This document shows positions 27,921 through 47,580 of a stretch of DNA of 64,000 bases, piece by piece. Position 1 is the stretch's first letter. Every line of letters begins with the position of its first letter. A program made the translations under genes and the position numbers. The notes under the pieces were generated by a model, which was not told the origin of the DNA, did no database searches, and saw nothing but the letters and a program-made list of their open reading frames with translations. This DNA is from Macrostomum lignano. Taxonomy: Eukaryota. The stretch spans positions 1-64,000 of the forward strand of contig NIVC01002950.1 in the NCBI GenBank assembly GCA_002269645.1. Direction: 5' to 3'.

Positions 27921-28719
27921 TACAATTCATCTTCCATTATATCAGAACAACAGAACTAGTGCAGTTCTTTACTCCATCTGTCACTCACACGCAATGTTAT
28001 TAATTTGCAGGTACACATTTGCACAGTGCACACCTGCGTATGTTAGTATTTCCAAAATTATTTTTTTTGTTTTGACGATACTTTTTACAAGAAACTATTT
28101 TTAGATGTTTATTTATACCAGGCACAGTAAGATATTATACAGGTTCTATATATATATTTTTTTTAAAGAAATGTTTTTACGATTCGACATATAAATACGA
28201 TTACGAACTTTTGCTGACGAAGTTTCTGCTAAGAAACTCATAAAAATTATCCAAAATTTTATTTTTTTAACTTAAAAAACACTCAAAATGCGTTTCATCT
28301 ACTACAAGTAGCGCAATTGTTCTTTGAAATGGTTGTAGCTCTTTCCGGTGTGTTTTTAGTTAAAAAAATATTTTTAAAAGTTCTAAGTTAAAAATAGTAG
28401 AGTGCACTAAAACTTCATCAGTGCACTGCTGTTATTGTAAAGCTACTCGTACATGATTATCATGTTGATGTAACATGAAGTTTCTCATGAAGTTTTGTAT
28501 TCAGTTCTTCACACAGGTAGTTTATGTAAATTTCCTGATTATTAACTTTTTATACTGTTCTTTGGTATGCGAGTTCGAGTATAGATCTCGCTTATTTTAC
28601 TCGGTAATTGTCAAGTAAACTTGTTAAAACTCTGTCATTCAGTTTTTTGCTTGTGTGCTTATCGTGAAGACGAATAGGCCTTGGTAGAATCTGAATAATT
28701 AGTATTGTGCTTTGAATAG

Positions 28720-30760
28720 TCAGTAATGAGATGTGAGTAGTCAGTATTGAGATTTGAGTAGTCAGTATTGAGATGTGAGTAGTCAGTATTGAGATATGAG
28801 TAGTCAGTATTGAAAATGAGATCTCAGTAGCTAGTATTGAGATGTGAGTAGTCAATATTGAGATGTGAGTAGTTATTCAATATTGAGATTTTAGTAGTCA
28901 CTATTGAGATGTGAGTAGTCATTATTGAGATGTGATTGAGATGTAATTGAGATCTCATTTTCATTATTGAAAATGATTCATTATTGAAATTGATCTCAGT
29001 AGTTAGTATTGGGATCTGAGTAGTCGGTATTGAAAATGAGATCTCAGTAGTCAGTAATGAGATGCCAATAGTCAGTAATGAGATGCCAGTAGTCAGTAAT
29101 GAGATCTCAGTAGTCAGTAATGAGATGCCAGTAGTCAGTAATGAGATCTCAGTAGTCAGTAATGAAAATGAGATCTCAGTAGTCAGTATTGAAAATGAGA
29201 TCTCATTAGTCAGTATTGAAAATGAGATCTCAGTAGTCAGTATTCAGATGTCAGTAGTCAGTATTCAGATGTCAGTAGTCAGTATTGAAAATGAGATCTC
29301 AGTAGTCAGTATTGAAAATGAGATGTCAGTAGTCAGTATTGAAAATGAGATCTCAGTAGTCAGTATTGAAAATGAGATGTCAGTAGTCAGTATTGAAAAT
29401 GAGATGTCAGTAGTCAGTATTGAAAATGAGATCTCAGTAGTCAGTATTGAAAATGAGATCTCAGTAGTCAGTATTGAAAATGAGATGTCAGTAGTCACTA
29501 TTGAAAATGAGATGTCAGTAGTCAGTATTGAAAATGAGATGTCAGTAGTCAGAATTCAGATCTCAGTAGTCAGTATTGAAAATGAGATGTCAGTAGTCAG
29601 TATTCAGATGTCAGTAGTCAGTATTCAGATGTCAGTAGTCAGTATTCAGATGTCAGTAGTCAGTATTCAGATGTCAGTAGTCAGTATTCAGATGTCAGTA
29701 GTCAGTATTGAAAATGAGATCTCAGTAGTCAGTATTGAAAATGAGATCTCAGTAGTCAGTATTGAAAATGAGATCTCAGTAGTCAGTATTGAAAATGAGA
29801 TCTCAGTAGTCAGTATTGAAAATGAGATGTCAGTAGTCACTATTGAAAATGAGATGTCAGTAGTCAGTATTTAGATGTCAGTAGTCAGTATTGAAAATGA
29901 GATCTCAGTAGTCAGTATTGAAAATGAGATCTCAGTAGTCAGTATTGAAAATGAGATGTCAGTAGTCAGTATTGAAAATGAGATCTCAGTAGTCAGTATT
30001 GAAAATGAGATGTCAGTAGTCAGTATTGAAAATGAGATCTCAGTAGTCAGTATTGAAAATGAGATCTCAGTAGTCAGTATTGAAAATGAGATGTCAGTAG
30101 TCAGTATTGAAAATGAGATCTCAGTAGTCAGTATTGAAAATGAGATCTCAGTAGTCAGTATTGAAAATGAGATCTCAGTAGTCAGTATTGAAAATGAGAT
30201 CTCAGTAGTCAGTCTTGAAAATGAGATCTCAGTAGTCAGTATTGAAAATGAGATCTCAGTAGTCAGTATTGAAAATGAGATCTCAGTAGTCAGTATTCAG
30301 ATGTCAGTAGTCAGTATTCAGATGTCAGTAGTCAGTATTCAGATGTCAGTAGTCAGTATTCAGATGTCAGTAGTCAGTATTCAGATGTCAGTAGTCAGTA
30401 TTGAAAATGAGATGTCAGTAGTCAGTATTCAGATGTCAGTAGTCAGTATTCAGATGTCAGTAGTCAGTATTCAGATGTCAGTAGTCAGTATTCAGATGTC
30501 AGTAGTCAGTATTGAAAATGAGATGTCAGTAGTCAGTATTCAGATGTCAGTAGTCAGTATTCAGATGTCAGTAGTCAGTATTCAGATGTCAGTAGTTAGT
30601 ATTCAGATGTCAGTAGTCAGTATTCAGATGTCAGTAGTTAGTATTCAGATGTCAGTAGTCAGTATTCAGATGTCAGTAGTCAGTATTGAAAATGAGATCT
30701 CAGTAGTCAGTATTGAGGTGTGAGTAGTCAGTATCGATATCTGAGCAGGCAGTATTGGAA
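28720..30760. repeat. Mixed 27-bp / 21-bp minisatellite upstream of MON2
   Basis: Units TCAGTAGTCAGTATTGAAAATGAGATC and TCAGTAGTCAGTATTCAGATG; the array explains the SVVSIENEI ORFs. Confidence 0.95.
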
Positions 30761-30915
30761 TCTAAGTAAAGAAATTGAAATATGAGTAACTCAATGCAAT
30801 TGAATTTAATTCAATTCATGCTTTTGCTAACATAGTTTGAAAATAAATTAACTAACAAAATCGCCACAACAATCGCTAACTGGTATAGAGCTATAGAGTC
30901 AGCCAGACTGGCACA

Positions 30916-31167
30916 ATGTCTTCGGCTCAGGCTCTGGACCAGGTGAAAGCTGACTTGCGGGCCCTATCGGTTGAATCTCGACGCAAACAGCCGCAGGTTC
31001 GCGACGCATCCGAGGCCGCCCTGGTCCGGCTGGGGCAGTTGAATGTCTCGACGACTCCTGCTGAACAGCTTCGCAGGGAGCTGCTTCAGATTAATAGCGA
31101 CTTGGTGCGGCCCGTGCTGTTGGCTTGCTCTACCAAGCATCCCAAACTGATACAACTGGCTTTGCAG
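30916..31167 (+). CDS. MON2: MON2 (ARF-GEF-like Golgi/endosome trafficking scaffold), coding exon 1
   Basis: MSSAQALDQVKADLRALSVESRRKQPQVRDASE...PVLLACSTKHPKLIQLALQ matches the MON2 N-terminus (DLRALS.E.KKK.P.VKEA.E; PFL..C.TK.PK..QL); donor CAG|GTTGGT. Confidence 0.93.
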
Positions 31168-31309
31168 GTTGGTGAATGGAGCTAACTTGCTACTGGTAGT
31201 AGTGCAGCTGGCTTTAGTACAGCTACTTGCATTGTTGATTTTTGGTTATGACTAATCCGATATCTTCTCAGATTCTTTAGTGTTTGTAGCGACCCTCCAA
31301 GCATCTTAG

Positions 31310-32560
31310 TTTATGAGTCTTTGCACCTATATCATCAGTCTTTGCACCTAAATCGTCAAGTCTTTGTTTTCACCTAAATCATCAGTCTTTGTAACTGAAT
31401 CGTCAAGTCTTTGTTTTCACCTAAATCATCAGTCTTTGTAACTGAATCGTTAGTCTTTGTTTGCACCTAAATCACCAGTCTTTGTTTGCATCTAAATCAC
31501 CAGTCTTTGTTTGCATCTAAATCACCAGTCTTTGTTTGCACCTGAATCACCAGTCTTTGTTTGCATCTAAATCACCAGTCTTTGTTTGCATCTAAATCAC
31601 CAGTCTTTGTTTGCACCTGAATCACCAGTCTTTGTTTGCATCTAAATCATCAGTCTTTGGTTGCACCTAAATCACCAGTCTTTGTTTGCATCTAAATCAC
31701 CAGTCTTTGTTTGCACCTGAATCACCAGTCTTTGTTTGCATCTAAATCACCAGTCTTTGTTTGCATCTAAATCACCAGTCTTTGTTTGCACCTGAATCAC
31801 CAGTCTTTGTTTGCATCTAAATCATCAGTCTTTGGTTGCACCTAAATCACCAGTCTTTGTTTGCACCTGAATCACCAGTCTTTGTTTGCATCTAAATCAC
31901 CAGTCTTTGTTTGCATCTAAATCACCAGTCTTTGTTTGCACCTGAATCACCAGTCTTTGTTTGCATCTAAATCATCAGTCTTTGGTTGCACCTAAATCAC
32001 CAGTCTTTGTTTGCATCTAAATCACCAGTCTTTGTTTGCACCTGAATCACCAGTCTTTGTTTGCATCTAAATCACCAGTCTTTGTTTGCATCTAAATCAC
32101 CAGTCTTTGTTTGCACCTGAATCACCAGTCTTTGTTTGCATCTAAATCATCAGTCTTTGGTTGCACCTAAATCACCAGTCTTTGTTTGCACCTGAATCAC
32201 CAGTCTTTGTTTGCATCTAAATCACCAGTCTTTGTTTGCATCTAAATCATCAGTCTTTGTTTGCACCTAAATCACCAGTCTTTGTTTGCACCTGAATCAC
32301 CAGTCTTTGTTTGCATCTAAATCATCAGTCTTTGTTTGCACCTGAATCGTCAGTGTTTGTTGTAAGCCTAAATAATCAGTCTTTGGTTGCACCTAAATCA
32401 CCAGTCTTTGCACCTGAATCACCAGTCTTTGTTTGCATCTAAATCATCAGTCTTTGTTTGCACCTGAATCGTCAGTGTTTGTTGTAAGCCTAAATAATCA
32501 GTCTTTGGTTGCACCTAAACCATAGTCTTCGTTTGTACCTGAACCGCCAGTCTTTGTTTT
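31310..32560. repeat. 25-bp minisatellite, MON2 intron 1 (CAGTCTTTGTTTGCACCTAAATCAC)
   Basis: About 50 tandem units fill most of the intron. Confidence 0.95.
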
Positions 32561-32635
32561 CACCACACCGGATCATCCCAGCAAGCCTCGAAGAGCTTAT
32601 ACAGCACGAATCCCTCCCCGTAACCTCGTCAACAG

Positions 32636-33115
32636 GCCCTCCAGCGTCTTCTAGGCGCTCGACTAATCAGCGAAGAATCCGGCGCCATGGTAGTCCAGAG
32701 CATGTGGACCCTGATGGAGGAATCAGTTGAAGAGGTTCGCCTACTCCAAACCGCCATGCTGCTAGTTAGCAATTGTCCCGGTCTAACTGGCCGACCCCTG
32801 TCCAAAGCGCTGGCTCTGGTGCTCAGACTGCATTTTAGTCGCAGCTCCATGGTGACTCAAACAGCCGCTGCCACTATTCGACAGTGCCTCACGGCCGTGA
32901 TGGACCGCGTGATGGTTGAAGACGCGGCGGCTCCGCCGCCAACTGGAAGCTCCTCGGAGGAGATTCAACCGGCCGCGGAGGACGCCAAGAATCTGCTGAC
33001 AGACCTGTGCCTGCTGGTTAACGGAGAGCAGCCGCACTGGTTGCACGGCCTCACTACGATGACTCGGTCGCTGGGCTTGGAGCTGCTGCACGCTGCTTTG
33101 GCCGACTTTCCTAAG
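32636..33115 (+). CDS. MON2: MON2 coding exon 2
   Basis: AACAG|GCC ALQRLL...MWTLMEESVEEVRLLQT...LSKALALVLRLHF...TAAATIRQ...DLCLLVNGEQPHWLHGLTTMTRSLGLELL...DFPK|GTCTGT; phase 0/0. Confidence 0.95.
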
Positions 33116-33159
33116 GTCTGTGAACTCGGCAGCTGCTTTCTAAGAAACACTTTGGCATA

Positions 33160-33665
33160 TCTGGATTTTGGCGCCACCGTTTTAGCATACGAGCGTATCC
33201 GGGTTTTGGCGCCAGTCTCTGGCTTATTCGAGTTTTCGCGCCGTCCTTTTAACATATTCGGGTTTTGGCGCCAACCTCTTATCATATTCGGATTTTGGCG
33301 CCAACCTCTGGCTTATTCGAGTTTTGGCGCCAATCTCTGGCTTATTCGAGTTTTGGCGCCGCCCTCTTATCATATTCGGGTTTTGGCGCCGCCCTTTGAG
33401 CATATTCGGATTTTGGCGCCAACCTCTGGCTTATTCATGTTTTGGCGCCGCCCTCTTATCATATTCGGGTTTTGGCGCCGCCCTTTGAGCATATTTTGGT
33501 TTTGGCGCCAACCTCTGCCTTATTCGAGTTTTGGCGCCGCCCTCTTATCATATTCGGGTTTTGGCGCCGCCCTTTGAGCATATTTGGGTTTTGGCGCCAA
33601 CCTCTGGCTTATTCGAGTTTTGGCGCCGCCCTTTTAGCATACATGGATCTGGGTTTTGGCGCCGG
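33160..33665. repeat. ~30-bp GGCGCC-containing minisatellite, MON2 intron 2
   Basis: TTTTGGCGCC(AACCTCTGGCTTATTCGAG / GCCCTCTTATCATATTCGGG) units. Confidence 0.9.
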
Positions 33666-33853
33666 TTACCTGGCATGGCCGAGGTTTGCTTCCCATTGCA
33701 ACCAAGTTGTAGATTCCTAAAGGAATCCAATTTAATACACTTCTGGCGCCCAGTATTGGCAGCGCCGCATGTGACTCAATTCTAGCGCCTCTGTTTCAGC
33801 ACTTCTGATTACGCAATTCAACTCCCACCGCACCCCAACCCTACCTGCCGCAG

Positions 33854-34436
33854 GTGTTCTCCGGCAATCCGCACTTCACTCGCCTACTAAAAGAGCAAGT
33901 CTGCCCGTTAATTATTCGCCTGTTTGGGCCAACACACAAGCACTCGCAGGCTGCTAATAGTGCTTTGTCATCGACCGGAATCTCGTCTGGCGGCGGTGCC
34001 TCGTCCTACCCGGCGCCGCCGGCGGCTCCTATCGGCGATTTGCCGCCAACTGCTGCATCGATGGCTTCGTCAGTGTCGACGCAAGCGTCGGCTAATTTTG
34101 CTATTCACGTCCGACTGCACAGGCTGGTGGGAGTGCTGCTGAATTCTTACTTTGGTCTGGTCAGCACAGAGTGCGAGATTTTCCTCACGCTACTGATTCG
34201 TTTAGTAGACTCGGATAAATGGCCCTGGCAACGAATTCTAGCCTTGGAAGTGCTGCACAAGCTGGTGCAACGGCCTGGCTTGGTGGCCGCAATCTGTTGC
34301 GCCTACGATATGAAACGGCACGCGTCGAAAATCTTTGCCGTCCTAGTCGGCGCTCTGGCTGGCTACGTTCAGGGCGTGTTCACCGCGCCCAGGGAGGTTG
34401 GCGTTGGCGCTGCGGGCTCGTCTGGTTCTGCCGCTA
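33854..34436 (+). CDS. MON2: MON2 coding exon 3
   Basis: CGCAG|GTG VFSGNPHFTRLLKEQVCPLIIRLF...TECEIFLTLLIRLVDSDKWPWQRILALE...YDMKRHASKIF; donor A|GTGAGT (phase 1). Confidence 0.95.
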
Positions 34437-34467
34437 GTGAGTGCTTAGCGGCTGTCGGTTGAGCTCT

Positions 34468-34925
34468 TCTGGCTACCCTCCTGGCTACCCTCCTCGCTAC
34501 CCTCCTGTCTACCCTCCTGGCTACCCTCCTGGCTACCCTCCTGGCTACCCTCCTGGCTACCCTTCTGGCTACCCTCCTGGCTACCCTCCTGGCTACCCTT
34601 CTGGCTACCCTTTTAACTACCCTCCTGGCTACCTTTTAGCTACCCTCTTGGCTACCCTCCTGGCTACCCTCCTTGCTACCCGATCTTTGCTACCCTCCTG
34701 GCTACCCTCCTGCCTACCCTCCAGGCTACCTTCCTGGCTACCCTCCTGGCTACCTTTTAGCTACCCTCTTGGCTACCCTCCTGGCTACCCTCCTGCCTAC
34801 CCTCCAGGCTACCTTCCTGGCTACCTTCCTGGCTACCCTCCTATCTAACCTCCTCGCTACCCTCCCGGCTACCCTCCTGGCTACCCTCCTTGCTGCTCTC
34901 CTTGCTACCCGACCTCTTCTACCCT
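34468..34925. repeat. 12-bp minisatellite (CTCCTGGCTACC), MON2 intron 3
   Basis: Tandem units; the array explains the GYPP/LLAT ORFs. Confidence 0.92.
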
Positions 34926-35343: not shown

Positions 35344-35885
35344 AAACCTCATTCACTGCTTAGAGCATACTAAATGCGTTGGCGGAATTTGTCTATGGCG
35401 AAACCTCATTCACTGCTTAGAGCATACTAAATGCGTTGGCGGAATTTGTCTATGGCGAAACCTCATTCACTGCTTAGAGCATACTAAATGCGTTGGCGGA
35501 ATTTGTCTATGGCGAAACCTCATTCACTGCTTAGAGCATACTAAATGCGTTAGCGAAATTTGTCTATGGCGAAACCTCATTCACTGCTTAGAGCATACTA
35601 AATGCGTTGGCGGAATTTGTCTATGGCGAAACCTCATTCACTGCTTAGAGCATACTAAATGCGTTGGCGGAATCTGTCTATGGCGAAACCTCATTCACTG
35701 CTTAGAGCATACTAAATGCGTTGGCGAAATTTGTCTATGGCGAAACCTCATTCACTGCTTAGAGCATACTAAATGCGCTGGCGGAATTTGTCTATGGCGA
35801 AACCTCATTCACTGCTTAGAGCATACTAAATGCGTTGGCGAAATTTGTCTATGGCCTCATTTAGTGCTTAGAGCATACTAAATGC
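35344..35885. repeat. 57-bp tandem repeat x~9, MON2 intron 4
   Basis: AAACCTCATTCACTGCTTAGAGCATACTAAATGCGTTGGCGGAATTTGTCTATGGCG repeated head to tail with no spacers. Confidence 0.95.
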
Positions 35886-36039
35886 GCCAGCAATACGTAA
35901 AACATGCGCTCCTTACTTCAGTGGTCATGGTAATCGTTTCATGAAATGCTACGAGCGTACTAGAGACCGGGGCAAGAAGTCAAAGTTCAGGCAAAATTCC
36001 AATTATTCATATCTTCGTAACTTGAAAACGTTGCCGTCA

Positions 36040-36565
36040 CAAGAATCGCTAAAGTCACTAGAGTTAACCACTCACTAGTGACTCTAGCGACTCAGGGACG
36101 ACACTTTTTGACTTTTTACCGACTGAAACGACTGAGAGGCGACTGTTGATTCACGTCACGCATCAAGTGAGTTGTACGAAGAGTTGCAAAAAGTAGTTTA
36201 AGAGTCGTTGTCTTAGCGCTCAATTTTCCACTAACTCAAGTGGACTGAATAGAGTTTTTTAAATGCAAAATTCGATTAAAATTCATAAATTGACGATTTA
36301 GACGCAGTTCTACAGCGACTAGAGCACGCCTCTCAAATACGACTCTACGACGCCAGAGTCACTACAGAGTCTCAGACAATAAAACGCCTCAAAGTGACTC
36401 TTCGGCGACTCTTTGACGACTTGTTTGCAACTTGTACCGTGACATCTTATCGTTTTAGAGTCGTCTAGAGTCAGCTTCAATTCTATTTTAGCCGTGTTAC
36501 CTAAAACAAATTTGAAACGATACTGAAGCTCTTCTAGGCCTGGGTAACTGTTTTCATCGGGCGGC
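36040..36565 (+). mobile_element. Dispersed GAGTC/GACTC-rich repeat, copy A
   Basis: Colinear and diverged relative to 37680-38183 (e.g. GGCGACTCTTTGACGACTTGTTTG, TCGTTTTAGAGTCGTCTAGAGTCA, GTTTTCA.CGGG/GTGGG end). Confidence 0.7.
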
Positions 36566-36809
36566 TCTTTCTACGGAAAAAAACCATAAATCTTCAAAAA
36601 ATCGTTTTAGATGAAAAAACGTATTTTTAAAGTGAAGTGAATGGAAACAACAGTAATGAGATTAACGAAATATAGTTTTTATAATAATTTTGGTATCTTC
36701 CATTTATTTATATAGCTGTTACTCCGTATGTCTTCTAGTGCGTATCTGTACAGAGAAACTAAAGCAATAACTATGAGGAGTATCATAAATTATAAATAAA
36801 AACCTCATA

Positions 36810-37451
36810 CTACAGCTCGTCCATCTGTCTGTAAATCTGTTTTAACTGTTGGACATTGTCTCTCAGCAATTCGGCATTCACTTTCCAATTGGCTGTCTTG
36901 TGTGGCATGGCGTGCATTGAGGCCATCCTGCCCGAAGCGGTAGCCGTTACTAGCATGTCTCTTAGTTGTGTCAGCGCTTTATGCGCCCCGGATAATTGCT
37001 TGTTGAAGCCCGCCATTATTGGTATCGATCGGTGTCGATTATTTGTTCGCTCGTCCTCTTCAGCATCCTCATTGGCGTCTAAGTGCTCTTGATCCAGATA
37101 GGTTGCCAGATCCTTTAGCATGGCGTCTAAGCGTTCGAGGCTGGCTTCGGCTTCCCTCTCCCGGCCCCAAGTGTCATCGTCTTCGTCGGGCTCTTTGCCA
37201 ATGTCGGCATCGTTCAAGTAGCTTCTTTTACTTCTTCGGTTGATTTTTTCTTCCATGAATCGTAGATTAATTCCCGCTTGAATGATATCACCCTGCGGAC
37301 CGTCGTTCAGGTGATCCAGTAGTTCTGTCAGGCTTTCAAAGTTGGGTAAATCTTCTTCTATGGTGAAGAAATCTATTGTTGAGGAATCCTTTTTGGTATT
37401 GTCCGTGGATCGACGCTGCCGATTGTGATGCTCTTTGGCGCGCGACTGGTA
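36810..37451 (-). CDS. Nested antisense secreted multibasic precursor-like protein, exon 2 (stop at 36810)
   Basis: Acceptor TTAACTGTACAG|TAC on the minus strand; 213-codon frame with RQRR, RRSKR and acidic/helical segments; AATAAA on the minus strand at 36708-36703. Confidence 0.78.
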   Translation of the reverse strand, partial: YQSRAKEHHNRQRRSTDNTKKDSSTIDFFTIEEDLPNFESLTELLDHLNDGPQGDIIQAGINLRFMEEKINRRSKRSYLNDADIGKEPDEDDDTWGREREAEASLERLDAMLKDLATYLDQEHLDANEDAEEDERTNNRHRSIPIMAGFNKQLSGAHKALTQLRDMLVTATASGRMASMHAMPHKTANWKVNAELLRDNVQQLKQIYRQMDEL

Positions 37452-37679
37452 CTGTACAGTTAAAGAGATAACGCGGAATCGTCTGATAAACGCATATTGA
37501 ATATTGTTATTCTCAGATGTATGCGACTTTTCCAAGGGAATATGCAAATACAATAACACTTTAATCGAATGACTTAAAGGCAAGGTGGCCGGAGTGACGG
37601 CTAAGGCCGGTTCACATTACATTCAGTAACTCCGCGGGTCATACCCGTTAATAACGTTACCATTACATTACGATACATT

Positions 37680-38183
37680 TTAACGACTCAACGACTGTAA
37701 TGCGACGAATAGGAGACGACTGTTGAGTCACTAACACATCACGTGAGCTGCAGAATCGTAAGAGTCGCGAAAAAGTCGCTCAGGAATCGTTGTGGTAGCG
37801 CTTAACTTTATACTAACCTTAAGTATACTAAATAGTGTTGTTATGAATGCGAAATGCGATTATAATTCATAAAGTGACACAGATGTACTTTAAACGCAAC
37901 TCAGTAATTCTACAGTGCCTCTAGAACGCCTCAGCTACGACTCTACGGTCCCAGAGTCACTATAGAAGCGTCACTTGCGTCGTTTCAGAGTCGCAGACAA
38001 TAAAACGATTAAAATTGACTTTTAGGCGACTCTTTGACGACTTGTTTGGCGACTTGTACCAGGACATCTCGTCGTTTTAGAGTCGTCTAGAGTCAACTTC
38101 TTTCCTATTTTACTTGTGTTACCAGCAAAAAAAATTGAAACAAATCTGGGACGCTTCTTAGCCTAAATACCGTTTTCAGTGGG
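37680..38183 (+). mobile_element. Dispersed GAGTC/GACTC-rich repeat, copy B (within nested gene intron)
   Basis: Colinear with 36040-36565; preceded by the Harbinger-like end TAA|GGCCGGTTCACA near 37604. Confidence 0.65.
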
Positions 38184-38586
38184 AAAGAAGATTGCTCAAA
38201 TCAATGTTAAAATAGGTCTAAAGGAACTTTACATACCTTTAAGTAATGTTTGACCTGCAAAGCTATTATCGGTAATGTGACAACAACATACATAGCAAGG
38301 GTAATTTTGCTGCAAATCCGAGGTCTGTTTACTGCAGTGGTGGCATGTACTGTCGCAACTCCTGCCATCAGCACAGCTCCGATGTGCTGCCCTTTTACAT
38401 CAGGGTTGAACTGCATAGCTCAGCTTATGTCTTTTGTTCAATGTGGCTGCCTTGAAGAGTAAAAGTAGCCTATTAGCTGTGTACTAACCACGACCAACTC
38501 TGCTGAACTTGCTCTTAGCATGTTAAGGACAAATTAAGAGATACACAATTCAAATAAAAATACTAAATGGTGAAATAGTACATCAC

Positions 38587-39093
38587 CTGTCTCAGCTCCT
38601 CCATGTGATCCAGCAAATAGCCAGAACCGTCAAACAGATCTGCGTATCGTCTCGATCGTTTGATTCGCTCGCCGTGTTGACTGGCGAATTCGCGCATTAG
38701 GTCAGACTTTATTCCGGCTATATGCTTGTCTTGCTTGGCTTTGTCATGGTTGGCCTTGTTTTTTTGATGCCTCCTTTTTGATGCTCTCCGATTTGTCTGC
38801 CTTTTGCTGGTAAATCCGCCGATTTTCTCGTTCGACTTGATACTTTCGGTAAAATTTTCTGCACTTTTCCGTAGCTGCAATAAATCGCTGTTTGGTACAG
38901 CTGAAGCTGGTGTAGTCCAAAACCAAGTGATATTGTATACCTGTCGGCTATAGCGGCTTTGTTTACCAACGGAGGCTTCAAATGTTTTAGACTGGTCGTC
39001 ATGGTGTTGACATCTTGCTGATTGTACTAGCACCAGCAATATTAACAGCAGTGGCGGCAGCAAAAGCGATCGCGTCAACTTTTTTGTCGGCAT
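38587..39093 (-). CDS. Nested antisense secreted multibasic precursor-like protein, exon 1
   Basis: ATG at 39093; signal peptide MPTKKLTRSLLLPPLLLILLVLVQSARC; RYSR, SKRR, RIKRSRR; donor CAG|GTGATG at 38586 (phase 0) joins in frame to exon 2, giving 382 aa. Confidence 0.8.
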
Positions 39094-40758
39094 TCCGACA
39101 CTCGTGTAGAATGATTCGTTTAGTTTTGTTTCTCTGCTTAAAAAAGCAATTTTGTCAACGCAGTAAGGTCTTATAATTCTGGTGTGTTGATGCGTTTTGC
39201 GGCTCGACTTCAACCGGATTTGTAAGGTCTCTAACAGACAGGCTTTGCAAGATAAATTGCTTTAGCCTGCGCGTGTTTTAACCTCAGTTGAATTGCACTT
39301 TAGTCCAACCACTGTCGATATCTCTATGGTCAAAAGATCGACAAATGATTTAGTGTCAAGCGTGGAAATCGTGTTTGTTAGTAAAATTTATATAATTCTA
39401 GATCTAGTCTCAGAATTAAATACGCATTAAGTAATAGCTAGAAGATGGAACACCAGATCACCTGTTTTTGTTGTCTTTATTGTTGCTTTATTGAAAAATG
39501 ACCAGATAAAATGCGACACTATATGTCGTAAATCAGATCATAAGCAAAGTCCCATTATGCTCGTAGTTTGTGAATGAAAAACAGATGTGTTGCTCTTCTC
39601 AAACAAGAAAGCTTCACAAATAAAGATCTAAGATCTTGTTTCTTTGACGCCTGACCCTCGTAGTGATTTAGTGCTGCGTATAGCTCGTAATAAACCTATA
39701 TTCCTTATGAGTGTACAACGCTCTATTAAAAAACTACAAACACATGTAAGTCGAAACATTCAAAGGTGTACTTTCATCACCAAAATAGTTATACTAAATA
39801 GCCTGCGGATTCGAGAACGTCAAGAAAATTTCAAATGAAAAGTCACTGTCTAATAGTATAACCTCAGACAGTAGCTAGTCCAAAATGACTGTCTGTAGCA
39901 TGAAACGCCAATCTAAATAATTCAGTTACAAATGTCCAAATTTAGGGTCTGCTAGTTGTCAAAGCTGTGCAATAAGCGCCAGATTTTACATGTAGCAAAA
40001 TGCATTTCCAATCGTACTGTCATTCCGTTGCTGCTCAAACAGATGGTGTGGAAACGAATTGCATCAGTCAACGTCTGTCAAGCACTTTTTATTCTCAAAG
40101 TCAATTCAGAATGGAATAAACATATTGGAAAATAATGCTAGAACACTTTTGTAAACAGCATTTACAAGCCAGACCTTTTCAATTGGTCATTTTCAATAAA
40201 ACAGCTATTTTTATCCGAGAGTGAACTCAAGTTCAGAATCTTCGCATCACTGATGTAACTATCAAAGCATCGGAATAGCAAGGTCTTTGAAACAATCCAA
40301 TACTTCCTTTCGTTTCTAAGACTGTCTCATTAATTTTGAAAAAATCATCTAGTTGCTAGGTATTAAAATATTTCAATATTTCCTTTCATTGTATTCATTT
40401 TGACTTTGTTTACGAGTTATTTTCTTCATTGACCATTGACGGCCTTCGCTTTAAGCTCTTATTGACTGACCATCTGCCGATATAATTAGAACTGATGGCG
40501 CATGACTTGGATTAAAAAAATAGGATTTCTAGTTAGCTGTACTTTACTTTTTTTTTTCTTTTACAGTCAAAATATTTCTAGCATAGCGCTATTGAATTCA
40601 GATAAAAAATTAATTTCTGAATTCAATTTTAGTCAGTTAAAACTGTCAGTTCAACAAATCTACTAGAGCGAGTTTGATCAACTGCGATCTAACATTCCAG
40701 CGAAGTTAAGCAGTTGCTAAGCAACTCTGTTTCCCACCCCATTTCGCCCTTCAAACAG

Positions 40759-41055: not shown

Positions 41056-41074
41056 GTTAGGCTCTTGATGGTTG

Positions 41075-41152
41075 GTTTGTCTGTGTCTGTCTGTCTGTCT
41101 GTCCGTCTGTCTGTCCGTCTGTCTGTCTGTCTGTCTGTCCGTCTGTCTGTCC

Positions 41153-41230
<78 letters not shown>

Positions 41231-41267
41231 CTGTCCGTCTGTCTGTCCGTCTGTCTGTCTGTCTGTC

Positions 41268-41302
<35 letters not shown>

Positions 41303-41311
41303 CTGTCTGTG

Positions 41312-41371
<60 letters not shown>

Positions 41372-41372
41372 C
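41075..41372. repeat. (GTCY)n tetranucleotide microsatellite
   Basis: CTGT/CCGT tandem run. Confidence 0.97.
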
Positions 41373-42269
41373 ATATCGTAAGTCCCGTTTATTCTCTTTG
41401 CGTGTCTGTCTTTTTGGCCTCGCTTTCCTGTAGGTTGCATTTTGTCCAAAAAATTCATCTGCCAGTATTTGACCACCTCGGGTTATTATACAAAATTGTT
41501 TTGCTTCCTTCTGTTGGAATTTTCACCCTCTTGCCACGACGCGATGAGGTCACACCTTGTTCTGATGGGGTACTTTAAGGATGAAGCCGTAACTTCCAGC
41601 CTCTCGTTTGCACTGATTAGCACGCTTAGCGAAATTACGCGTGCTAACCTCTTTCCTAGAAACTGTTTCTTAGCGCATGCTGCACTTACTGCCTGGCGCG
41701 TGCGTTTTCCTCCTATAAACAGGCCCGTTTCATCTTTGTTTTTTATTCTTAGTTCAACTTTTTTCGGCCTAGGCTTGTGATTTAGGGCTTCTGCTTTTAT
41801 GCTTTAACATTTTACTGTTTTTTACTTGCCGGGTGAAATCCATTTTAGCCTGAAGGTAGTTTGAAGACAAGAAATTATTTGACGGAAAGGTTGACCAGGT
41901 AAATACGTTTCTCGTCTATATCAATTGCTTAGAAGAATATCAGTCTTATTTTCCGTCTGAGTCCATATTTTGCGTCCCTGCCCGGCTGAAGTGCTCCGTT
42001 GTTTGTCCTTTAATCAATGGCCCCGTCGTTGTTACACCTGCTTCTTGTGCCAGGTGATGAGTTGAGCACTATAGTTTTGCGACAGGAATGTTTTGTTGCT
42101 TCGATTGGATCTGTGCTACTTATTTCTTAACCTTTACTTTCTGGATTCCCGTGCCATAACTTACTGCGTCGGGATTTGTACAGTATGGATTGCAGTGCGG
42201 ACACACTTTGATCGATAGGTGCAACTTTTTTAATCAATACCCATGTGTTTGCCTGAGTTCTGGCTTTCG

Positions 42270-42820
<551 letters not shown>

Positions 42821-43984
42821 GCTTCCGTCAGACTAAAAGAAACAAAATCAGATGCAGGAAAAAGGCAATTTAAGACTTCATTTCGCCGGAGACAGGCAGA
42901 CACTCGATCGTTTTGCCCATGGCTGTCCTCATTCGGAATTTCTATCCTCTCTCAAATAGTGGAAGATGATGACCGCGTGGTTGGGAAGTGAAATCCGACC
43001 TACCTTCCCCCCGACTAGGCCCCTCCGCTGTCGAAGTCTATCTCCGCAGGCCCATTGCTCTCGCACGCTGATGCTAGTTTTGTTATCGCTTCCGCTGTTG
43101 CACTGGGCTAGGGTTACCGCTTGATTAGTGATGGCGTGCTCCGCTACCGTAACTGTAATATTACTAACATTATAGCCTACTATAGATTACTTATTGTACT
43201 TCTTAACTGTACTTGCCACTGCCGGTCTCGGTTTTATTTGTGAGAATGAGGCGGCCCTCTCAATCTGCAGACTCTTACTATCCGTATAGCTATAGTTATT
43301 CGTGCGCGTGTCTCTCCTCCCCTCTTTGGGAGTTTCTGCTATCGATCTACAGGGCTGCCTGTTTTTCGCCCACTCTCTCTCTCTCTCATTCTTCCACCGT
43401 CCTGCTTCTCCCCGCAGGCAAAAGTTGTTTTCGATTCTGTGTGCTTCTTTATTTTCCGCGGCGCCATTGGAATCTATAATTAAAATATTGTGACGAGCAT
43501 GTAGCTGGAAGGCGCAAGTTTTGAGGGAAATGAGGGTGGGCGGGGGGAGGGGTGAAGATGTTCAGTTCTGGCCTCTGTCCGGCTCAGTAGCTTGCGTACT
43601 TTTTTAATGTTTAATCGATTCTGTTTTAGCATATTTAATTATTTTGACCCAATGACCCAGTGGGAGCGCTGAAATTGTTCTTTCCATGTTAGCCATCCAG
43701 ACTTTGTCATTTTTAATTAGACATGAAAGTTGTAACCTTCGAATATGTCATTTTTATCATGAAACATAGAAGATGTGTCATTTGATATGTCATGTTTGAC
43801 ATTAGATAGATATAAGATAAGGCATGATAATTTACGTGTCATTTTTAACAATAGAAATTTAGGGAGTGACATTGGAAATGTCACACCATCTACTTCCAAT
43901 TTCAGACATTCCATTTCTAAAGTCACTTTTTATTTCTAATTTATTTCTCGTAATATCACACCCTCAGTTTCTAATTTCATGAAT

Positions 43985-44325
43985 TCCATTTCTAATGCCA
44001 CACATTCCATGTCTAATGCCACACATTCCATTTCGAATGTCACACATTCCATTTCGAATGTCACACATTCCATTTCGAATGTCACACATTCCATTTCGAA
44101 TGTCACACATTCCATTTCGAATGTCACACATTCCATTTCGAATGTCACACATTCCATTCCGAATGTCACACATTCCATTTCGAATGTCACACATTCCATT
44201 TCGAATGTCACATTCCATTTCGAATGTCACACATTCCATTCCGAATGTCACACATTCCATTTCGAATGTCACACATTCCATTTCGAATGTCACACATTCC
44301 ATTCCGAATGTCACACATTCCATTA
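43985..44325. repeat. 21-bp minisatellite (CACATTCCATTTCGAATGTCA)
   Basis: Tandem units with an internal ACATTC...GAATGT inverted motif. Confidence 0.95.
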
Positions 44326-45054
44326 GAAACAAAAAACGTGACATTTTGAATGTACTGTTGGACATTTGAAGTGGTAAGTTATCTAATAAATAAAACAATT
44401 ACAATTAGTAATGACAATAAATTATGATTATAATACGCGTCTGTATTAACGAATGTATACATGCCTAGCTTTGAACCTTGAGTCGTCTGCAGCAATGCTT
44501 TTTCGTTGAACTTTGCCAAAAAGCCTTCGGGAGCTTTTAGCTAACAATATTGAGGTGAATTGGCTATAGGCTAGTTAATAAGAGTCGTACACGCTATCGG
44601 CTAGTTTTTTTAAAGGCCTCTTGCCTCTTAACTAGATTGTTCCTGATAATCTGGCCATGGTTGCTAGCACAAATTTAATATGATTTATGGCTTCCTTGAG
44701 TGCAGTAGTGCCGGTCACTAAGCGACTGAGATCTTATTAATTAACCTTTGCCTTGTCCCTATCTTATTTGAGGTGGTTTTTCTTGTGTTAAAGTCGAACA
44801 TCCGAGAACCACTATTCTGTAGTGTAAACCTCGGATTCTAGCGCTTATACTTACTGTTTTAACCTGTTCGTGCGATCAAAGACTGCGTTAATTATAATTA
44901 TTAGGTTTCATTGTGTCTGTGTAGCAATAAATATATATGCGTTATTCATAAGCAACTGGTGGGCTATTTACCATATTCATGTGGCCTCCAGAAATGTATT
45001 TCCCTAATTAGTATTAGAACTAGCTAATTCCCTTAACAACAGAGATAATTCCCT

Positions 45055-45842
45055 TAGCAACCGAACTAGCTACCCTAGCAACCGTACAATTAGCTTTAGC
45101 AACCGAACTAGCTACCCTAGCAACCGTACAATTAGCTTTAGCAACCGAACTAGCTACCCTAGCAACCGTACAATTAGCTTTAGCAACCGAACTAGCTACC
45201 CTAGCAACCGTACAATTAGCTTTAGCAACCGAACTAGCTACCCTAGCAACCGTACAATTAGTATTAGCAACCGAACTAGCTACCCTAGCAACCGTACAAT
45301 TAGCTAGCTACCCTAGCAACCGTACAATTAGCTTTAGCAACCGAACTAGCTACCCTAGCAACCGTACAATTAGCTTTAGCAACCGAACTAGCTACCCTAG
45401 CAACCGTACAATTAGCTTTAGCAAGCGAACTAGCTACCCTAGCAACCGTACAATTAGTATTAGCAACCGAACTAGCTACCCTAGCAACCGTACAATTAGC
45501 TTTAGCAACCGAACTAGCTACCCTAGCAACCGTACAATTAGCTTTAGCAAGCGAACTAGCTACCCTAGCAACCGTACAATTAGCTTTAGCAACCGAACTA
45601 GCTACCCTAGCAACCGTACAATTAGCTTTAGCAAGCGAACTAGCTACCCTAGCAACCGTACAATTAGCTTTAGCAAGCGAACTAGCTACCCTAGCAACCG
45701 TACAATTAGTATTAGCAACCGAACTAGCTACCCTAGCAACCGTACAATTAGTATTAGCAACCGAACTAGCTACCCTAGCAACCGTACAATTAGTATTAGC
45801 AACCGAACTAGCTACCCTAGCAACCCACAATTAGTATTAGCA
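45055..45842. repeat. 42-bp minisatellite built from two diverged 21-mers
   Basis: TAGCAACCGAACTAGCTACCC + TAGCAACCGTACAATTAGCTT alternate strictly. Confidence 0.95.
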
Positions 45843-46249
45843 ATCGATTATCAAACTAGATTTAATAGTTCAGCCCTCTACGAGTATATGTAATGGAAAT
45901 CGAACAATCCATTGAAATCGGCTTATAAATGAAACTTGATCTTTCTGTTGAATTTTATTCAAGCCAGTTTCTCGCTATTCTCTCCAGCTATTCACTGCAC
46001 TTAAAATATTCCGTTCCTTTAATATTTCCCAGCGAATATATTTATCCCTAAGAGGAGTTGCATTTCGCTTTCTAGATCTGTCGATCTGAGAATTCAACTG
46101 GAATTGTAAACAGATCCCGATGGAAATATTTTCACTGCTAAGTCGTTGGGGTTGTTCTGGTATTGGCTTTTTATATGATCCTTGTGTGGATGTGGCTCTT
46201 AATTCTAAGCTAAATTTTATATTGTATATCCGCATTTTCTACTTGCTAA

Positions 46250-47580
46250 CTTGTTTGTCTGACTCATTTTCTCTGAAACTGTCTTTGTCTGACTCATTTT
46301 ATTTGAAACTGTCTGACTCATTTTCTTGGAAACTAACTGTCTTTGTCTAACTCATTTTCTTGGAAACCGGCTTTGTCTGACTCATTTTATCTGAAACTGA
46401 TTTCGTCTGACTCATTTTCTTTGAAACTTTTTTGTCTGACTCATTTTTTCTAAAACTGTCTTTGACTCATTTTCTCTGAAACTGTCTTTGACTCATTTTC
46501 TCTGAAACTGTGTCTTTGTCTGTCTCATTTTCTCTAAAACTGGCTTTGTCTGACTCATTTTTTGAAACTTTTTTTTCTGTCTTATTTTCTCTAAAACTGT
46601 CTTTGTCTGACTCATTTTCTCTGAAACTGTGTTTCTCTGACTCATTTTCTCTGAAACTGTCTTTGTCTGACTCATTTTCTTGGAAACTGGCTTTGTCTGA
46701 CTCATTTTCTTGGAAACTGGGTTTGTCTGACTCATTTTCTCTGAAACTGATTTTGTCTGACTTGTTTTCTTCTAAACTGTCTTTGTCTGACTCATTTTCT
46801 TCGAAACTGTCTGACTCATTTTATTTGAAACTGTCTGACTCATTTTCTTGGAAACTAACTGTCTTTGTCTAACTCATTTTCTCTGAAACTGTCTTTGTCT
46901 GACTCATTTTCTTGGAAACTGGGTTTGTCTGACTCATTTTCTCTGAAACTGATTTTGTCTGACTTGTTTTCTTCTAAACTGTCTTTGTCTGACTCATTTT
47001 CTTCGAAACTGTCTGACTCATTTTCTTCTAAACTGACTTTGTCTGACTCATTTTATTTGAAACTGTCTGACTCATTTTATTTGAAACTGTCTGACTCATT
47101 TTCTTGGAAACTAACTGTCTTTGTCTAACTCATTTTCTCTGAAACTGTCTTTGTCTGACTCATTTTCTTGGAAACTGGCTTTGTCTGACTCATTTTCTTG
47201 GAAACTGGGTTTGTCTGACTCATTTTCTCTGAAACTGATTTTGTCTGACTCATTTTATCTGAATCTGTCTTTGACTCATTTTATCTGAAACTGTTTTGAC
47301 TCATTTTCTCTGAAACTGATTTTGTCTGACTCATTTTCTTCTAAACTGTCTTTGTCTGACTCATTTTCTTCGAAACTGTCTGACTCATTTTCTTCGAAAC
47401 TGTCTGACTCATTTTCTTCGAAACTGTCTGACTCATTTTCTTCTAAACTGTCTTTGTCTGACTCATTTTCTTTGAAACTGTGTGTGTCTGACTCATTTTC
47501 TTGGAAACTGTGTGTGTCTGACTCATTTTCTTGGAAACTGTGTGTGTCTGACTCATTTTCTCTAAAATGGTGTGTGTCTG
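46250..47580. repeat. 24/30-bp minisatellite (TGTCTGACTCATTTTCTCTGAAACTGTCTT)
   Basis: Tandem units run up to the exon 6 acceptor region. Confidence 0.95.

What the first reader, a model, noticed from the sequence alone, without database searches (positions are those of the whole stretch)
36810..39093. Nested antisense gene in MON2 intron 4 encoding an unrecognised secreted, multi-furin-site precursor
Seen: two exons join in phase 0 (ELRQ|YQSR) into 382 aa with a signal peptide, predicted mature N-terminal Gln, two N-glycosylation sequons (NIT, NFT), no Cys beyond the leader, and a minus-strand AATAAA. Basic clusters RYSR, SKRR, RIKRSRR, RQRR, RRSKR and RHR divide it into segments, two of which share LLDH(M/L). 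Established: R-X-K/R-R is the furin/PC consensus, and acidic dibasic-rich Cys-free precursors are typical of granins and prohormones. No Gly-basic amidation signal is present, so classic amidated neuropeptides are unlikely. Inference: a lineage-specific polyprotein yielding several helical peptides (secretory-granule, gland or seminal-fluid type). I recognise no family.
Basis: partly seen in the sequence, partly recalled or inferred. Interest (0 to 1): 0.75.

Follow-up and report, generated by a model that had tools for sequence, protein, structure and literature searches.

The report
Annotated orphan secretory gene, flatworm
This is a real two-exon gene of the flatworm Macrostomum lignano, nested backwards inside the MON2 gene and already in GenBank as a "hypothetical protein"; it encodes a species-restricted, signal-peptide-bearing helical protein with three furin-type cleavage clusters, and its function is still unknown.

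Summary
On the minus strand, exon 1 (39093..38587) and exon 2 (37451..36810) join across a GT..AG intron in phase 0. The product is 382 aa, with a textbook signal peptide, one Cys (in the leader), two N-glycosylation sequons and a downstream AATAAA.

It is not "unrecognised". The protein is 100% identical to GenBank PAA54206.1 (BOX15_Mlig017689g2, Macrostomum lignano), a model from an RNA-seq-based annotation. The assembly holds three copies; the two whose contigs I fetched also lie antisense inside the MON2 homologue.

No homologue outside this species was found with Pfam, PDB sequences, a 5.8-billion-protein search or phmmer over 1.84 billion representatives. That is ordinary here: about 35% of M. 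lignano ORF genes are species-specific.

R-X-K/R-R motifs are enriched (4 against 0.45 expected, P about 0.001). Total dibasic pairs are not (P 0.32). The LLDH "repeat" is at chance level, and the mature protein is neutral (pI 7.0), not acidic.

Its Met at -4 is not among residues reported as efficient in human cells. A RAP/LRPAP1-like reading was tested and not supported.

Best reading: a lineage-restricted secretory proprotein cut by furin-type convertases. Function and tissue remain unknown. Interest is low to moderate.

The parts
38587..39093 (-). Exon 1 coding part (aa 1-169), ATG at 39093..39091, followed by donor GT at 38586..38585
   Evidence: The start and junction are the same as in GenBank PAA54206.1.
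39010..39093 (-). Signal peptide codons (aa 1-28): n-region MPTKKLTRS, h-region LLLPPLLLILLVLV, c-region QSARC
   Evidence: Read from the sequence. It is the only hydrophobic segment. UniProt names the identical protein 'Signal peptide-containing protein'. The exact cleavage site (after S25 or C28) is inferred.
37452..38586 (-). Intron (1135 nt, GT..AG, phase 0); contains a TE-like dispersed repeat at 37705-38132
   Evidence: Divergence from copy g1 is 3.3% in the intron against 0.6% in the exons.
36810..37451 (-). Exon 2 coding part (aa 170-382 plus stop TAG at 36812..36810)
38647..38667 (-). Furin-type cluster 1: R143-I-K-R-S-R-R149 (two overlapping R-X-K/R-R matches)
   Evidence: Enrichment test. 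Cleavage not shown.
37410..37421 (-). Furin-type cluster 2: R180-Q-R-R183, followed by Ser
   Evidence: Cleavage not shown.
37224..37235 (-). Furin-type cluster 3: R242-S-K-R245, followed by Ser-Tyr
   Evidence: Cleavage not shown.
38848..38934 (-). Stretch carrying the two N-glycosylation sequons N54-I-T and N80-F-T
   Evidence: Occupancy not testable here.
36813..36824 (-). C-terminal M379-D-E-L382, a KDEL-like ending with a non-canonical Met at -4
   Evidence: Conserved in all full-length copies. Chance of a -DEL ending from this composition is about 6e-4 (my arithmetic on the counts). Function as a retrieval signal is doubtful (PMC2140024; PMC8248988).
36703..36708 (-). Poly(A) signal AATAAA, 101 nt after the stop
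39170..39175 (-). TATAAG, a possible TATA-like element 77-82 nt upstream of the ATG. A T-rich tract ending in AG at about 39141 could instead be a trans-splice acceptor.
   Evidence: Read from the sequence. Inference only.
30901..34462 (+). Host gene: 5' exons of the MON2 homologue (DCB positions 4-80 in 30901-31182; DCB 99-177 and HUS start in 32687-33577; HUS 77-161 in 33854-34462)
   Evidence: Pfam hits. MON2 models spanning the nested gene on paralogous contigs.

Best explanation
The feature is a bona fide, transcribed, two-exon gene of Macrostomum lignano (Mlig017689; this window holds copy g2). It lies antisense inside an intron of the MON2 homologue. It encodes a taxonomically restricted, soluble, Cys-free and probably largely helical secretory-pathway protein of about 41 kDa.

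Shown: the gene structure; identity with an RNA-seq-derived GenBank model; three genomic copies whose exons are more conserved than the intron; signal-peptide architecture; enrichment of furin-type motifs.

Inferred: the protein enters the ER through a cleavable signal peptide and is N-glycosylated near its N-terminus. On its way out it is cut by a furin/kexin-type proprotein convertase at RIKRSRR(149), RQRR(183) and RSKR(245). Cutting would release four products:
- a glycosylated N-terminal piece ending in a very basic stretch (residues 109-149);
- a peptide of about 30 residues (YADLFDGSGYLLDHMEELRQYQSRAKEHHN..);
- an acidic piece of about 58 residues;
- a 137-residue helical C-terminal domain.

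The products would not be amidated, and no peptide copies are repeated. It therefore looks like a lineage-specific proprotein of a gland or neurosecretory cell rather than a classical multi-copy neuropeptide precursor. Tissue and biological role are unknown.
For: - Gene structure and ORF.
- 100% identity to PAA54206.1 and 99% to the g3 copy.
- The GenBank annotation of this assembly comes from stranded RNA-seq transcript assembly and excludes repeat-overlapping and non-coding transcripts: PMC5730564.
- The two other copies, on the contigs I fetched, are also nested in MON2.
- Exon divergence is 0.6% against 3.3% for the intron, with 52 indel columns in the intron.
- pN/pS is 0.18 and 0.37, on very few changes.
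- There is a single N-terminal hydrophobic segment. UniProt's name for the protein is 'Signal peptide-containing protein'.
- R-X-[KR]-R occurs 4 times against 0.45 expected, P = 0.0011 (whole shuffle) and 0.0012 (60-aa block shuffle).
- P1' residues are Ser, Tyr, Ser and Ser. From my own knowledge, these are compatible with furin, and RSKR|S is also the proNGF site.
- No TM segment or other retention feature apart from -MDEL.
Against: - Cleavage is unproven.
- Total dibasic and [KR]R counts are not significantly above composition (P 0.32 and 0.05).
- One basic cluster (SKRR) is lost in the g1-type copy.
- No orthologue exists to show that the sites or the intervening peptides are conserved.
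- The C-terminal -MDEL could mean retrieval to the ER, upstream of where furin acts.
- No expression, localisation or peptidomic data for this gene were found in the supplements I could search.
- The AF2 single-sequence model is of low confidence (pLDDT 48), so the 'helical' description is weak.
Confidence: 0.45

Rival explanations
1. A secreted or gland-stored lineage-specific protein that is not processed. The R-X-K/R-R matches would then be a by-product of its Arg/Lys-rich charge blocks. The protein would act full-length, for example as a component of mucus, rhabdites, egg shell or cement, or seminal fluid.
For: - The protein is 16% K+R, and total dibasic pairs are at the shuffled expectation.
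- A strongly basic block (residues 96-149) is followed by a strongly acidic block (180-310). This suggests electrostatic self-association or binding rather than peptide release.
- One basic cluster is not conserved between copies.
- Species-specific secreted proteins are very common in this animal (PMC5816591).
Against: Four strict furin-consensus matches remain improbable even under block shuffling that preserves local composition (P 0.0012). All of them have favourable P1' residues.
Confidence: 0.25
2. A soluble resident of the ER or early Golgi, retrieved by the KDEL receptor through its C-terminal -MDEL. It would act as a helical, Cys-free escort or chaperone, working like RAP/LRPAP1 (ends HNEL) or MESD. 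The furin motifs would be unused, or used only on escaped molecules.
For: - Signal peptide plus a C-terminal x-D-E-L. The chance of -DEL is about 6e-4 from this composition (counts).
- The motif is kept in all full-length copies.
- About 41 kDa mature, Cys-free, predicted all-helical. From my own knowledge, this resembles RAP.
- A weak pairwise BLASTP match to the end of human RAP domain 3 (E 0.014 for that single comparison).
- KDEL-receptor specificity at -4 differs between organisms (PMC8248988).
Against: - Met at -4 is outside the PROSITE pattern [KRHQSA]-[DENQ]-E-L. It is also not among the residues reported as efficient in human cells (K, R, H, N, F, W, Y; S and Q weaker; PMC2140024).
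- Uncharged ADEL is not retrieved by human receptors (PMC8248988).
- A profile comparison with 13 vertebrate RAPs gives probability 0.4%.
- No RAP Pfam domain is detected.
- From general knowledge, ER-resident chaperones are usually deeply conserved, whereas this protein is an orphan.
Confidence: 0.12
3. A classical neuropeptide or granin-type precursor yielding bioactive neurosecretory peptides.
For: Signal peptide, several convertase motifs, Cys-free. From general knowledge, flatworms have prohormone convertases and many lineage-specific prohormones.
Against: - No Gly-dibasic amidation site.
- No repeated peptide copies.
- Neutral rather than acidic.
- No granin, 7B2 or proSAAS hit, or any other Pfam hit.
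- At 382 aa, with a 137-residue uncut C-terminal domain, it is atypical.
- No neural expression evidence was found.
Confidence: 0.1
4. A young, effectively neutral orphan gene, possibly born de novo in the MON2 intron, that is transcribed and annotated but has no selected function.
For: No homologue anywhere. Nested in an intron rich in TE and tandem-repeat sequence. One assembly copy is frame-shifted.
Against: - A 382-codon spliced ORF is kept in at least three sequences.
- Exons are five-fold less diverged than the intron.
- pN/pS is below 1.
- The frameshift is a GGGG-to-GGG homopolymer change. A second database entry with the same g1-type substitutions (A0A1I8JEZ8) is full-length, so an assembly error is likely.
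- The signal peptide is well formed.
Confidence: 0.08

Closest known systems
GenBank PAA54206.1 / PAA83450.1 / PAA70651.1 (BOX15_Mlig017689g2, g3, g1), UniProt A0A1I8GX33, A0A267GBM5, A0A267FA28, A0A1I8JEZ8: 'hypothetical protein' / 'Signal peptide-containing protein' of Macrostomum lignano
   Same: The window's protein is 100% identical to the g2 entry and 97-99% identical to the others. Exon junction, start and stop are the same. Where context is available, the gene has the same antisense position inside MON2.
   Different: Nothing differs. This is the same gene. None of these entries carries a function, a domain or a publication that I could find.
Furin/PC-processed, non-amidated secretory proproteins without Cys (proSAAS, 7B2, secretogranin-type proteins)
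   Same: Signal peptide, no disulfides, helical or disordered character, several R-X-K/R-R sites that would split the chain into a few unique, non-repeated fragments, and no amidation signals.
   Different: No sequence relationship is detectable (Pfam; phmmer). The protein is neutral, not acidic. It lacks the conserved motifs of those families (for example, the Cys-containing PPNPCP motif of 7B2, recalled from memory, is impossible in a Cys-free protein). It ends in -MDEL. Sorting to granules is unknown.
RAP / LRPAP1 (alpha-2-macroglobulin receptor-associated protein; Pfam PF06400 + PF06401)
   Same: Similar size. Signal peptide, no Cys in the mature chain, predicted all-helical, charged, and a C-terminal KDEL-like tetrapeptide (HNEL in RAP, MDEL here).
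   Different: No RAP Pfam domains. hhalign probability is 0.4% against a 13-sequence vertebrate RAP profile. The only similarity is a 44-residue BLASTP match at E 0.014, and it falls in the middle of the flatworm protein, not at its C-terminus. Met at -4 is a doubtful retrieval signal.
Intron-nested antisense genes of metazoans
   Same: A complete gene with its own putative promoter, intron and poly(A) signal lies on the opposite strand inside an intron of a larger conserved host gene.
   Different: Nothing unusual. From general knowledge, this arrangement is common in animal genomes.

Membership tests
Cleavable-signal-peptide secretory protein | N-terminal positively charged n-region, hydrophobic h-region of 7-15 residues, polar c-region with small residues at -3 and -1, and no later TM segment | tested here: met
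   n-region MPTKKLTRS, h-region LLLPPLLLILLVLV, c-region QSARC (A at -3, C at -1; alternatively V and S for cleavage after S25). No other hydrophobic window. UniProt's name for the protein agrees. SignalP itself was not available.
Furin / proprotein-convertase substrate | R-X-K/R-R consensus present beyond chance | tested here: met
   Four matches in three clusters against 0.45 expected, P about 0.001 under whole and block shuffles.
Furin / proprotein-convertase substrate | Actual endoproteolysis at those sites in vivo | not testable with these tools
   Needs Western blotting or peptidomics. No proteomic data for this protein were found.
Amidated neuropeptide precursor | Gly immediately before a dibasic or furin site (amidation donor) | tested here: not met
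   Only G-K or G-R followed by non-basic residues (G43K-Q, G254K-E, G265R-E, G343R-M). G254 is Asp in copy g3.
Multi-copy peptide polyprotein | Repeated related peptide units between cleavage sites | tested here: not met
   The best inter-segment similarity (the LLDH motif) has z 2.3 and P about 0.04 among 21 comparisons.
Granins / 7B2 / proSAAS | Match to the family profile; overall acidic composition (granins) | tested here: not met
   No Pfam-A family at E <= 1 for the whole protein or E <= 10 for the segments, apart from two irrelevant sub-threshold hits. Mature pI is 7.0.
RAP / LRPAP1 | Alpha-2-MRAP N- and C-terminal domains (PF06400, PF06401) | tested here: not met
   No Pfam hit. hhalign probability 0.4%. 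Pairwise BLASTP E 0.014 only. The RAP profile was vertebrate-only, so very remote homology is not strictly excluded.
KDEL-type soluble ER resident | C-terminal tetrapeptide matching [KRHQSA]-[DENQ]-E-L or an experimentally efficient variant | tested here: inconclusive
   Positions -3 to -1 (D-E-L) match. Met at -4 is outside the pattern and not among the residues named as efficient (PMC2140024). ADEL fails in human cells, but specificity differs between species (PMC8248988). The M. lignano receptor was not examined.
Nested (intronic, antisense) gene | Whole transcription unit inside an intron of a host gene on the other strand | tested here: met
   MON2 gene models span the locus on both fetched paralogous contigs. 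MON2 DCB/HUS exons lie upstream in the window. The intron number (4) was not verified.
Transposable-element or repeat-derived ORF | Similarity of the coding sequence to TE proteins or to dispersed or tandem repeats | tested here: not met
   No Pfam TE domain. The repeats found lie in the intron and the 3' flank, not in the exons. The GenBank annotation excluded repeat-overlapping transcripts (PMC5730564).

The most novel reading that the evidence does not exclude
The gene arose recently, within the Macrostomum lineage and possibly de novo from intronic sequence of MON2. It has already acquired a signal peptide, convertase sites and a KDEL-like tail. On this reading it acts either as the source of new non-amidated signalling or secretory peptides, or as a 7B2/RAP-style escort that is retrieved through -MDEL until furin cleavage in the trans-Golgi releases its N-terminal parts. 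Nothing here excludes this, because no outgroup Macrostomum genome or transcriptome could be searched and no localisation data exist.
Probability: 0.1. Interest if true: 0.55.

Novelty: new member of a known kind. Interest (0 to 1): 0.22.

Why it matters
If the convertase-processing reading is right, this is one more lineage-specific secretory proprotein in a model flatworm in which a third of genes are orphans. It could serve as a candidate for gland, neurosecretory or reproductive biology, and M. lignano transgenesis and RNAi make it testable. It does not bear on a long-standing open question. The gene model is already public, the nested arrangement is commonplace, and absence of homologues is the norm for this genome. 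The signal peptide and the strict furin motifs are solid. The acidity, the overall dibasic richness and the LLDH repeat are not. It also adds the overlooked -MDEL terminus, which must be considered before the protein is called secreted.

Tried and rejected
1. RAP/LRPAP1 homology. This was my own lead, based on the Cys-free helical ~40 kDa chain plus a KDEL-like end. A 13-species RAP profile against the Mlig017689 alignment gave hhalign probability 0.4%. Rejected as homology.
2. Pfam on the whole protein and on three segments, up to E 10: only DUF4650 (E 0.023) and RRN3 (E 0.16), both far below threshold.
3. PDB sequence search: only a ribosomal eL43 match at E 1.5.
4. Homologue searches: the 5.8-billion-protein word-indexed search and phmmer over 1.84 billion representatives both returned only the M. 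lignano cluster.
5. AlphaFold2 single-sequence model: pLDDT 48, pTM 0.21, all helices. This is too poor for a fold search, so none was run.
6. Expression or annotation of Mlig017689 in the literature. There were no full-text hits. There were no hits in the held supplements of PMC5816591 (file truncated), PMC7336406, PMC8662610, PMC5946080, PMC5977470 and PMC12896417. No supplements are held for PMC10786194 or PMC2140024.
7. Whether MDEL was tested as a retrieval signal. All 20 AXDEL variants were made by Raykhel et al., but the result for Met is only in a figure that I cannot read.
8. Rfam scan of 35-41 kb at E <= 0.1: nothing.
9. Recovering the M. lignano MON2 protein to count introns. A search with the 32687-33577 ORF returned nothing at E <= 1e-20, probably because the tandem-repeat-encoded tail of that ORF swamped the word index. 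The intron ordinal therefore remains unverified.
10. Internal repeats between putative fragments: not significant.
Full report
1. What is in the sequence.

On the minus strand, an ATG at 39093 opens a 507-nt exon that ends at 38587 (...CTG AGA CAG|GTGATG). After an 1135-nt intron, a 642-nt exon runs from 37451 (...TTAACTGTACAG|TAC CAG TCG) to the stop at 36812..36810. The two parts join in phase 0 and translate to 382 residues.

- a basic n-region, a Leu-rich h-region and a QSARC c-region;
- a single Cys (C28);
- NIT at 54 and NFT at 80;
- the basic clusters RYSR, SKRR, RIKRSRR, RQRR, RRSKR and RHR;
- two LLDH motifs;
- a minus-strand AATAAA, 101 nt after the stop.

There is no second hydrophobic segment.

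2. Identity.

[quoted passage not shown] It is 99% identical to copy g3 (PAA83450.1) and 97% to copy g1 (PAA70651.1).

The GenBank annotation of that assembly was built from RNA-seq (StringTie/TACO with unstranded assemblies excluded, plus trans-splice and poly(A) evidence). It was filtered to remove non-coding and repeat-overlapping transcripts (PMC5730564). The gene is deposited but uncharacterised, not 'unrecognised'.

3. Context.

On the contigs carrying g3 and g1, the same gene lies on the opposite strand inside a 1697-aa gene model. That model has DCB, Sec7-like HUS/HDS and Mon2_C domains, so it is the MON2 homologue.

In the window, MON2 exons on the plus strand are recognisable at three places:
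- 30901-31182 (DCB positions 4-80, E 1e-17);
- 32687-33577 (DCB 99-177 plus the start of HUS);
- 33854-34462 (HUS 77-161).

The nesting is confirmed. I could not verify that the host intron is number 4. Three upstream exons are demonstrated, and a fourth near 35.0-35.2 kb is only plausible.

The MON2 introns here are full of tandem-repeat arrays. A TE-like element of about 400 bp occurs both in the nested gene's intron and just 3' of the gene.

4. Is it a constrained coding gene?

Against copy g1:
- the exons differ at 7 of 1148 aligned positions (0.6%);
- the intron differs at 36 of 1087 positions (3.3%), plus 52 indel columns.

Nei-Gojobori-type counts give pN/pS of 0.37 against g1 (4 non-synonymous, 3 synonymous). 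Against g3 the value is 0.18 (2 non-synonymous, 3 synonymous). Both are in the direction of purifying selection, but the counts are tiny.

The shortened 276-aa g1 protein results from a GGGG-to-GGG change in a homopolymer. A UniProt entry with the same g1-type substitutions (A0A1I8JEZ8) is full-length. I read the frameshift as a probable long-read assembly error, not as evidence of decay.

5. Homology.

Nothing was found outside M. lignano:
- Pfam-A returned no family at E <= 1 for the whole protein. At E <= 10 on three segments it returned only two irrelevant sub-threshold hits.
- The PDB sequence search returned nothing meaningful.
- The word-indexed search of 5.8 billion proteins returned only the protein's own cluster.
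- Full phmmer over 1.84 billion 50%-identity representatives also returned only the protein's own cluster.

For this organism that is ordinary. Grudniewska et al. classify 35% of ORF-bearing M. lignano gene clusters as species-specific (PMC5816591). The databases searched probably lack other Macrostomum species, so 'genus-restricted' and 'species-restricted' cannot be told apart.

- Strict furin consensus. R-X-[KR]-R occurs four times in three clusters (RIKR/RSRR at 143-149, RQRR at 180-183, RSKR at 242-245). Residue shuffles give 0.45 expected, P = 0.0011. Shuffling within 60-residue blocks gives P = 0.0012. This cue survives.
- Dibasic richness. There are 11 adjacent basic pairs against 9.3 expected (P 0.32). 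[KR]R occurs 9 times against 5.2 expected (P 0.05). This is a consequence of 16% K+R, not a signal.
- Acidity. The mature protein has pI 7.0. A very basic block (about 96-149) is followed by a very acidic one (about 180-310). It is not granin-like in composition.
- LLDH(M/L). The best similarity among 21 segment pairs has z 2.3 and P about 0.04, which is chance level after multiple testing. There are no repeated peptide units.
- Amidation. There is no Gly-dibasic site. The four Gly-monobasic positions are not in a cleavage context, and G254 is Asp in g3.
- Conservation of sites. Two of the four amino-acid differences in the g1-type copy turn ASKRR into ALKSR, so that cluster is not constrained.

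The protein ends in -Q-M-D-E-L. With this composition, the chance of ending in D-E-L is about 6e-4 (from the residue counts), and the motif is present in every full-length copy. In a protein with a signal peptide, this raises KDEL-receptor retrieval to the ER as an alternative.

Three things count against it:
- Met at -4 lies outside the PROSITE pattern [KRHQSA]-[DENQ]-E-L.
- In the systematic AXDEL screen of Raykhel et al., the residues named as efficient at -4 are K, R, H, N, F, W and Y, with S and Q weaker (PMC2140024). The value for Met is only in a figure that I could not read.
- Gerondopoulos et al. show that uncharged ADEL is not retrieved by human receptors. They also show that receptor specificity at -4 differs between organisms (PMC8248988).

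I therefore treat -MDEL as a possible but doubtful retrieval signal.

8. The RAP idea.

The protein is Cys-free, helical and about 40 kDa, with a signal peptide and a KDEL-like end. That recalled RAP/LRPAP1 (HNEL), so I tested it.
- Pairwise BLASTP gave one 44-residue match (GERIKRSRR...HHN against GERVSRSRE...RHN) at E 0.014 for the single comparison. The match lies mid-protein, not at the C-terminus.
- A profile of 13 vertebrate RAPs compared by hhalign with the Mlig017689 alignment gave probability 0.4%.
- No RAP Pfam domain is detected.

Membership is not supported. A functional analogy remains a low-probability rival.

9. Structure.

The single-sequence AlphaFold2 model has mean pLDDT 48 and pTM 0.21. 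It is predicted as a string of helices, with only residues about 100-130 above pLDDT 75. It is not usable for a fold search.

10. Most likely mechanism.

Shown: the locus is a real, expressed, conserved-in-copy gene whose product enters the secretory pathway.

Inferred:
- signal-peptide removal after S25 or C28;
- N-glycosylation at N54 and/or N80;
- transit to the trans-Golgi, where a furin/kexin-type convertase cuts after R146/R149, R183 and R245.

The predicted products are a glycosylated N-terminal fragment with a basic tail, a peptide of about 30 residues, an acidic fragment of about 58 residues, and a 137-residue helical C-terminal domain. None is amidated or repeated.

I give this reading about 0.45. 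The rivals are:
- the same protein secreted without processing (0.25);
- an ER or early-Golgi resident retrieved through -MDEL (0.12);
- a true neuropeptide or granin precursor (0.10);
- a functionless young orphan (0.08).

No expression, localisation or proteomic information for Mlig017689 could be found in the literature or the supplements available to me. The tissue and the role are open.

11. Verdict.

It is oversold on the granin-like, polyprotein and 'unrecognised' claims. The nested arrangement and the orphan status are common in this genome. Interest is low to moderate. The most informative next steps are searches in other Macrostomum genomes and transcriptomes, in situ hybridisation, and a tagged construct with and without -MDEL and with mutated furin sites.

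Noticed in passing
window 36128-36510 and 37705-38132: Two same-orientation copies, 80-86% identical, of a dispersed element of about 400 bp rich in GAGTC/GACTC. One lies just 3' of the nested gene and one inside its intron. It is probably a non-autonomous transposable element.
   Followed up: partly
window 28701-30757, 31320-32564, 33192-33641, 34469-34910, 35344-35886, 41084-41371, 42270-42820, 43983-44324, 45054-45847, 46254-47567: Dense tandem-repeat arrays (periods 3, 4, 12, 21, 25, 27, 30, 42 and 57 bp, among others) fill the MON2 introns and the upstream region. They generate many long spurious ORFs on both strands, for example 41072-41578, 42243-42662 and 45300-45830.
   Followed up: partly
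window 37165-37168 (GGGG run) compared with L002 (copy g1): Copy g1 has GGG instead of GGGG, which truncates its annotated protein to 276 aa. A UniProt entry with the same g1-type substitutions is full-length, so this is probably a homopolymer assembly error.
   Followed up: yes
window 36400-39500 compared with L001 (copy g3): The divergence is mosaic. There are 0 substitutions in 2042 aligned bases across the 5' flank, exon 1 and the intron, then 5 in 642 bases of exon 2 and 21 in 407 bases of the 3' flank. Three of the exon-2 differences are shared by g3 and g1. This suggests gene conversion or recombination between copies of this neopolyploid genome, or an assembly chimera.
   Followed up: no
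window 38773-38780 (codons 105 and 107): Two of the four amino-acid differences in the g1-type copy fall within three residues of each other and destroy a basic cluster (ASKRR becomes ALKSR).
   Followed up: partly
window 16640-17239 (+): An ORF with a QRICH1-domain match (PF25561, E 1e-6, 29.1 bits, just under the 30.8-bit cut-off). It is probably an exon of an unrelated upstream gene.
   Followed up: no
window 48896-51323 (+): A long run of repeated units encoding LKPQIVQN(S/T)LWTDSSLKLSRI(V/L)YGLTQASNCPE-type peptides in several frames. It is another large tandem array downstream in the MON2 region.
   Followed up: no
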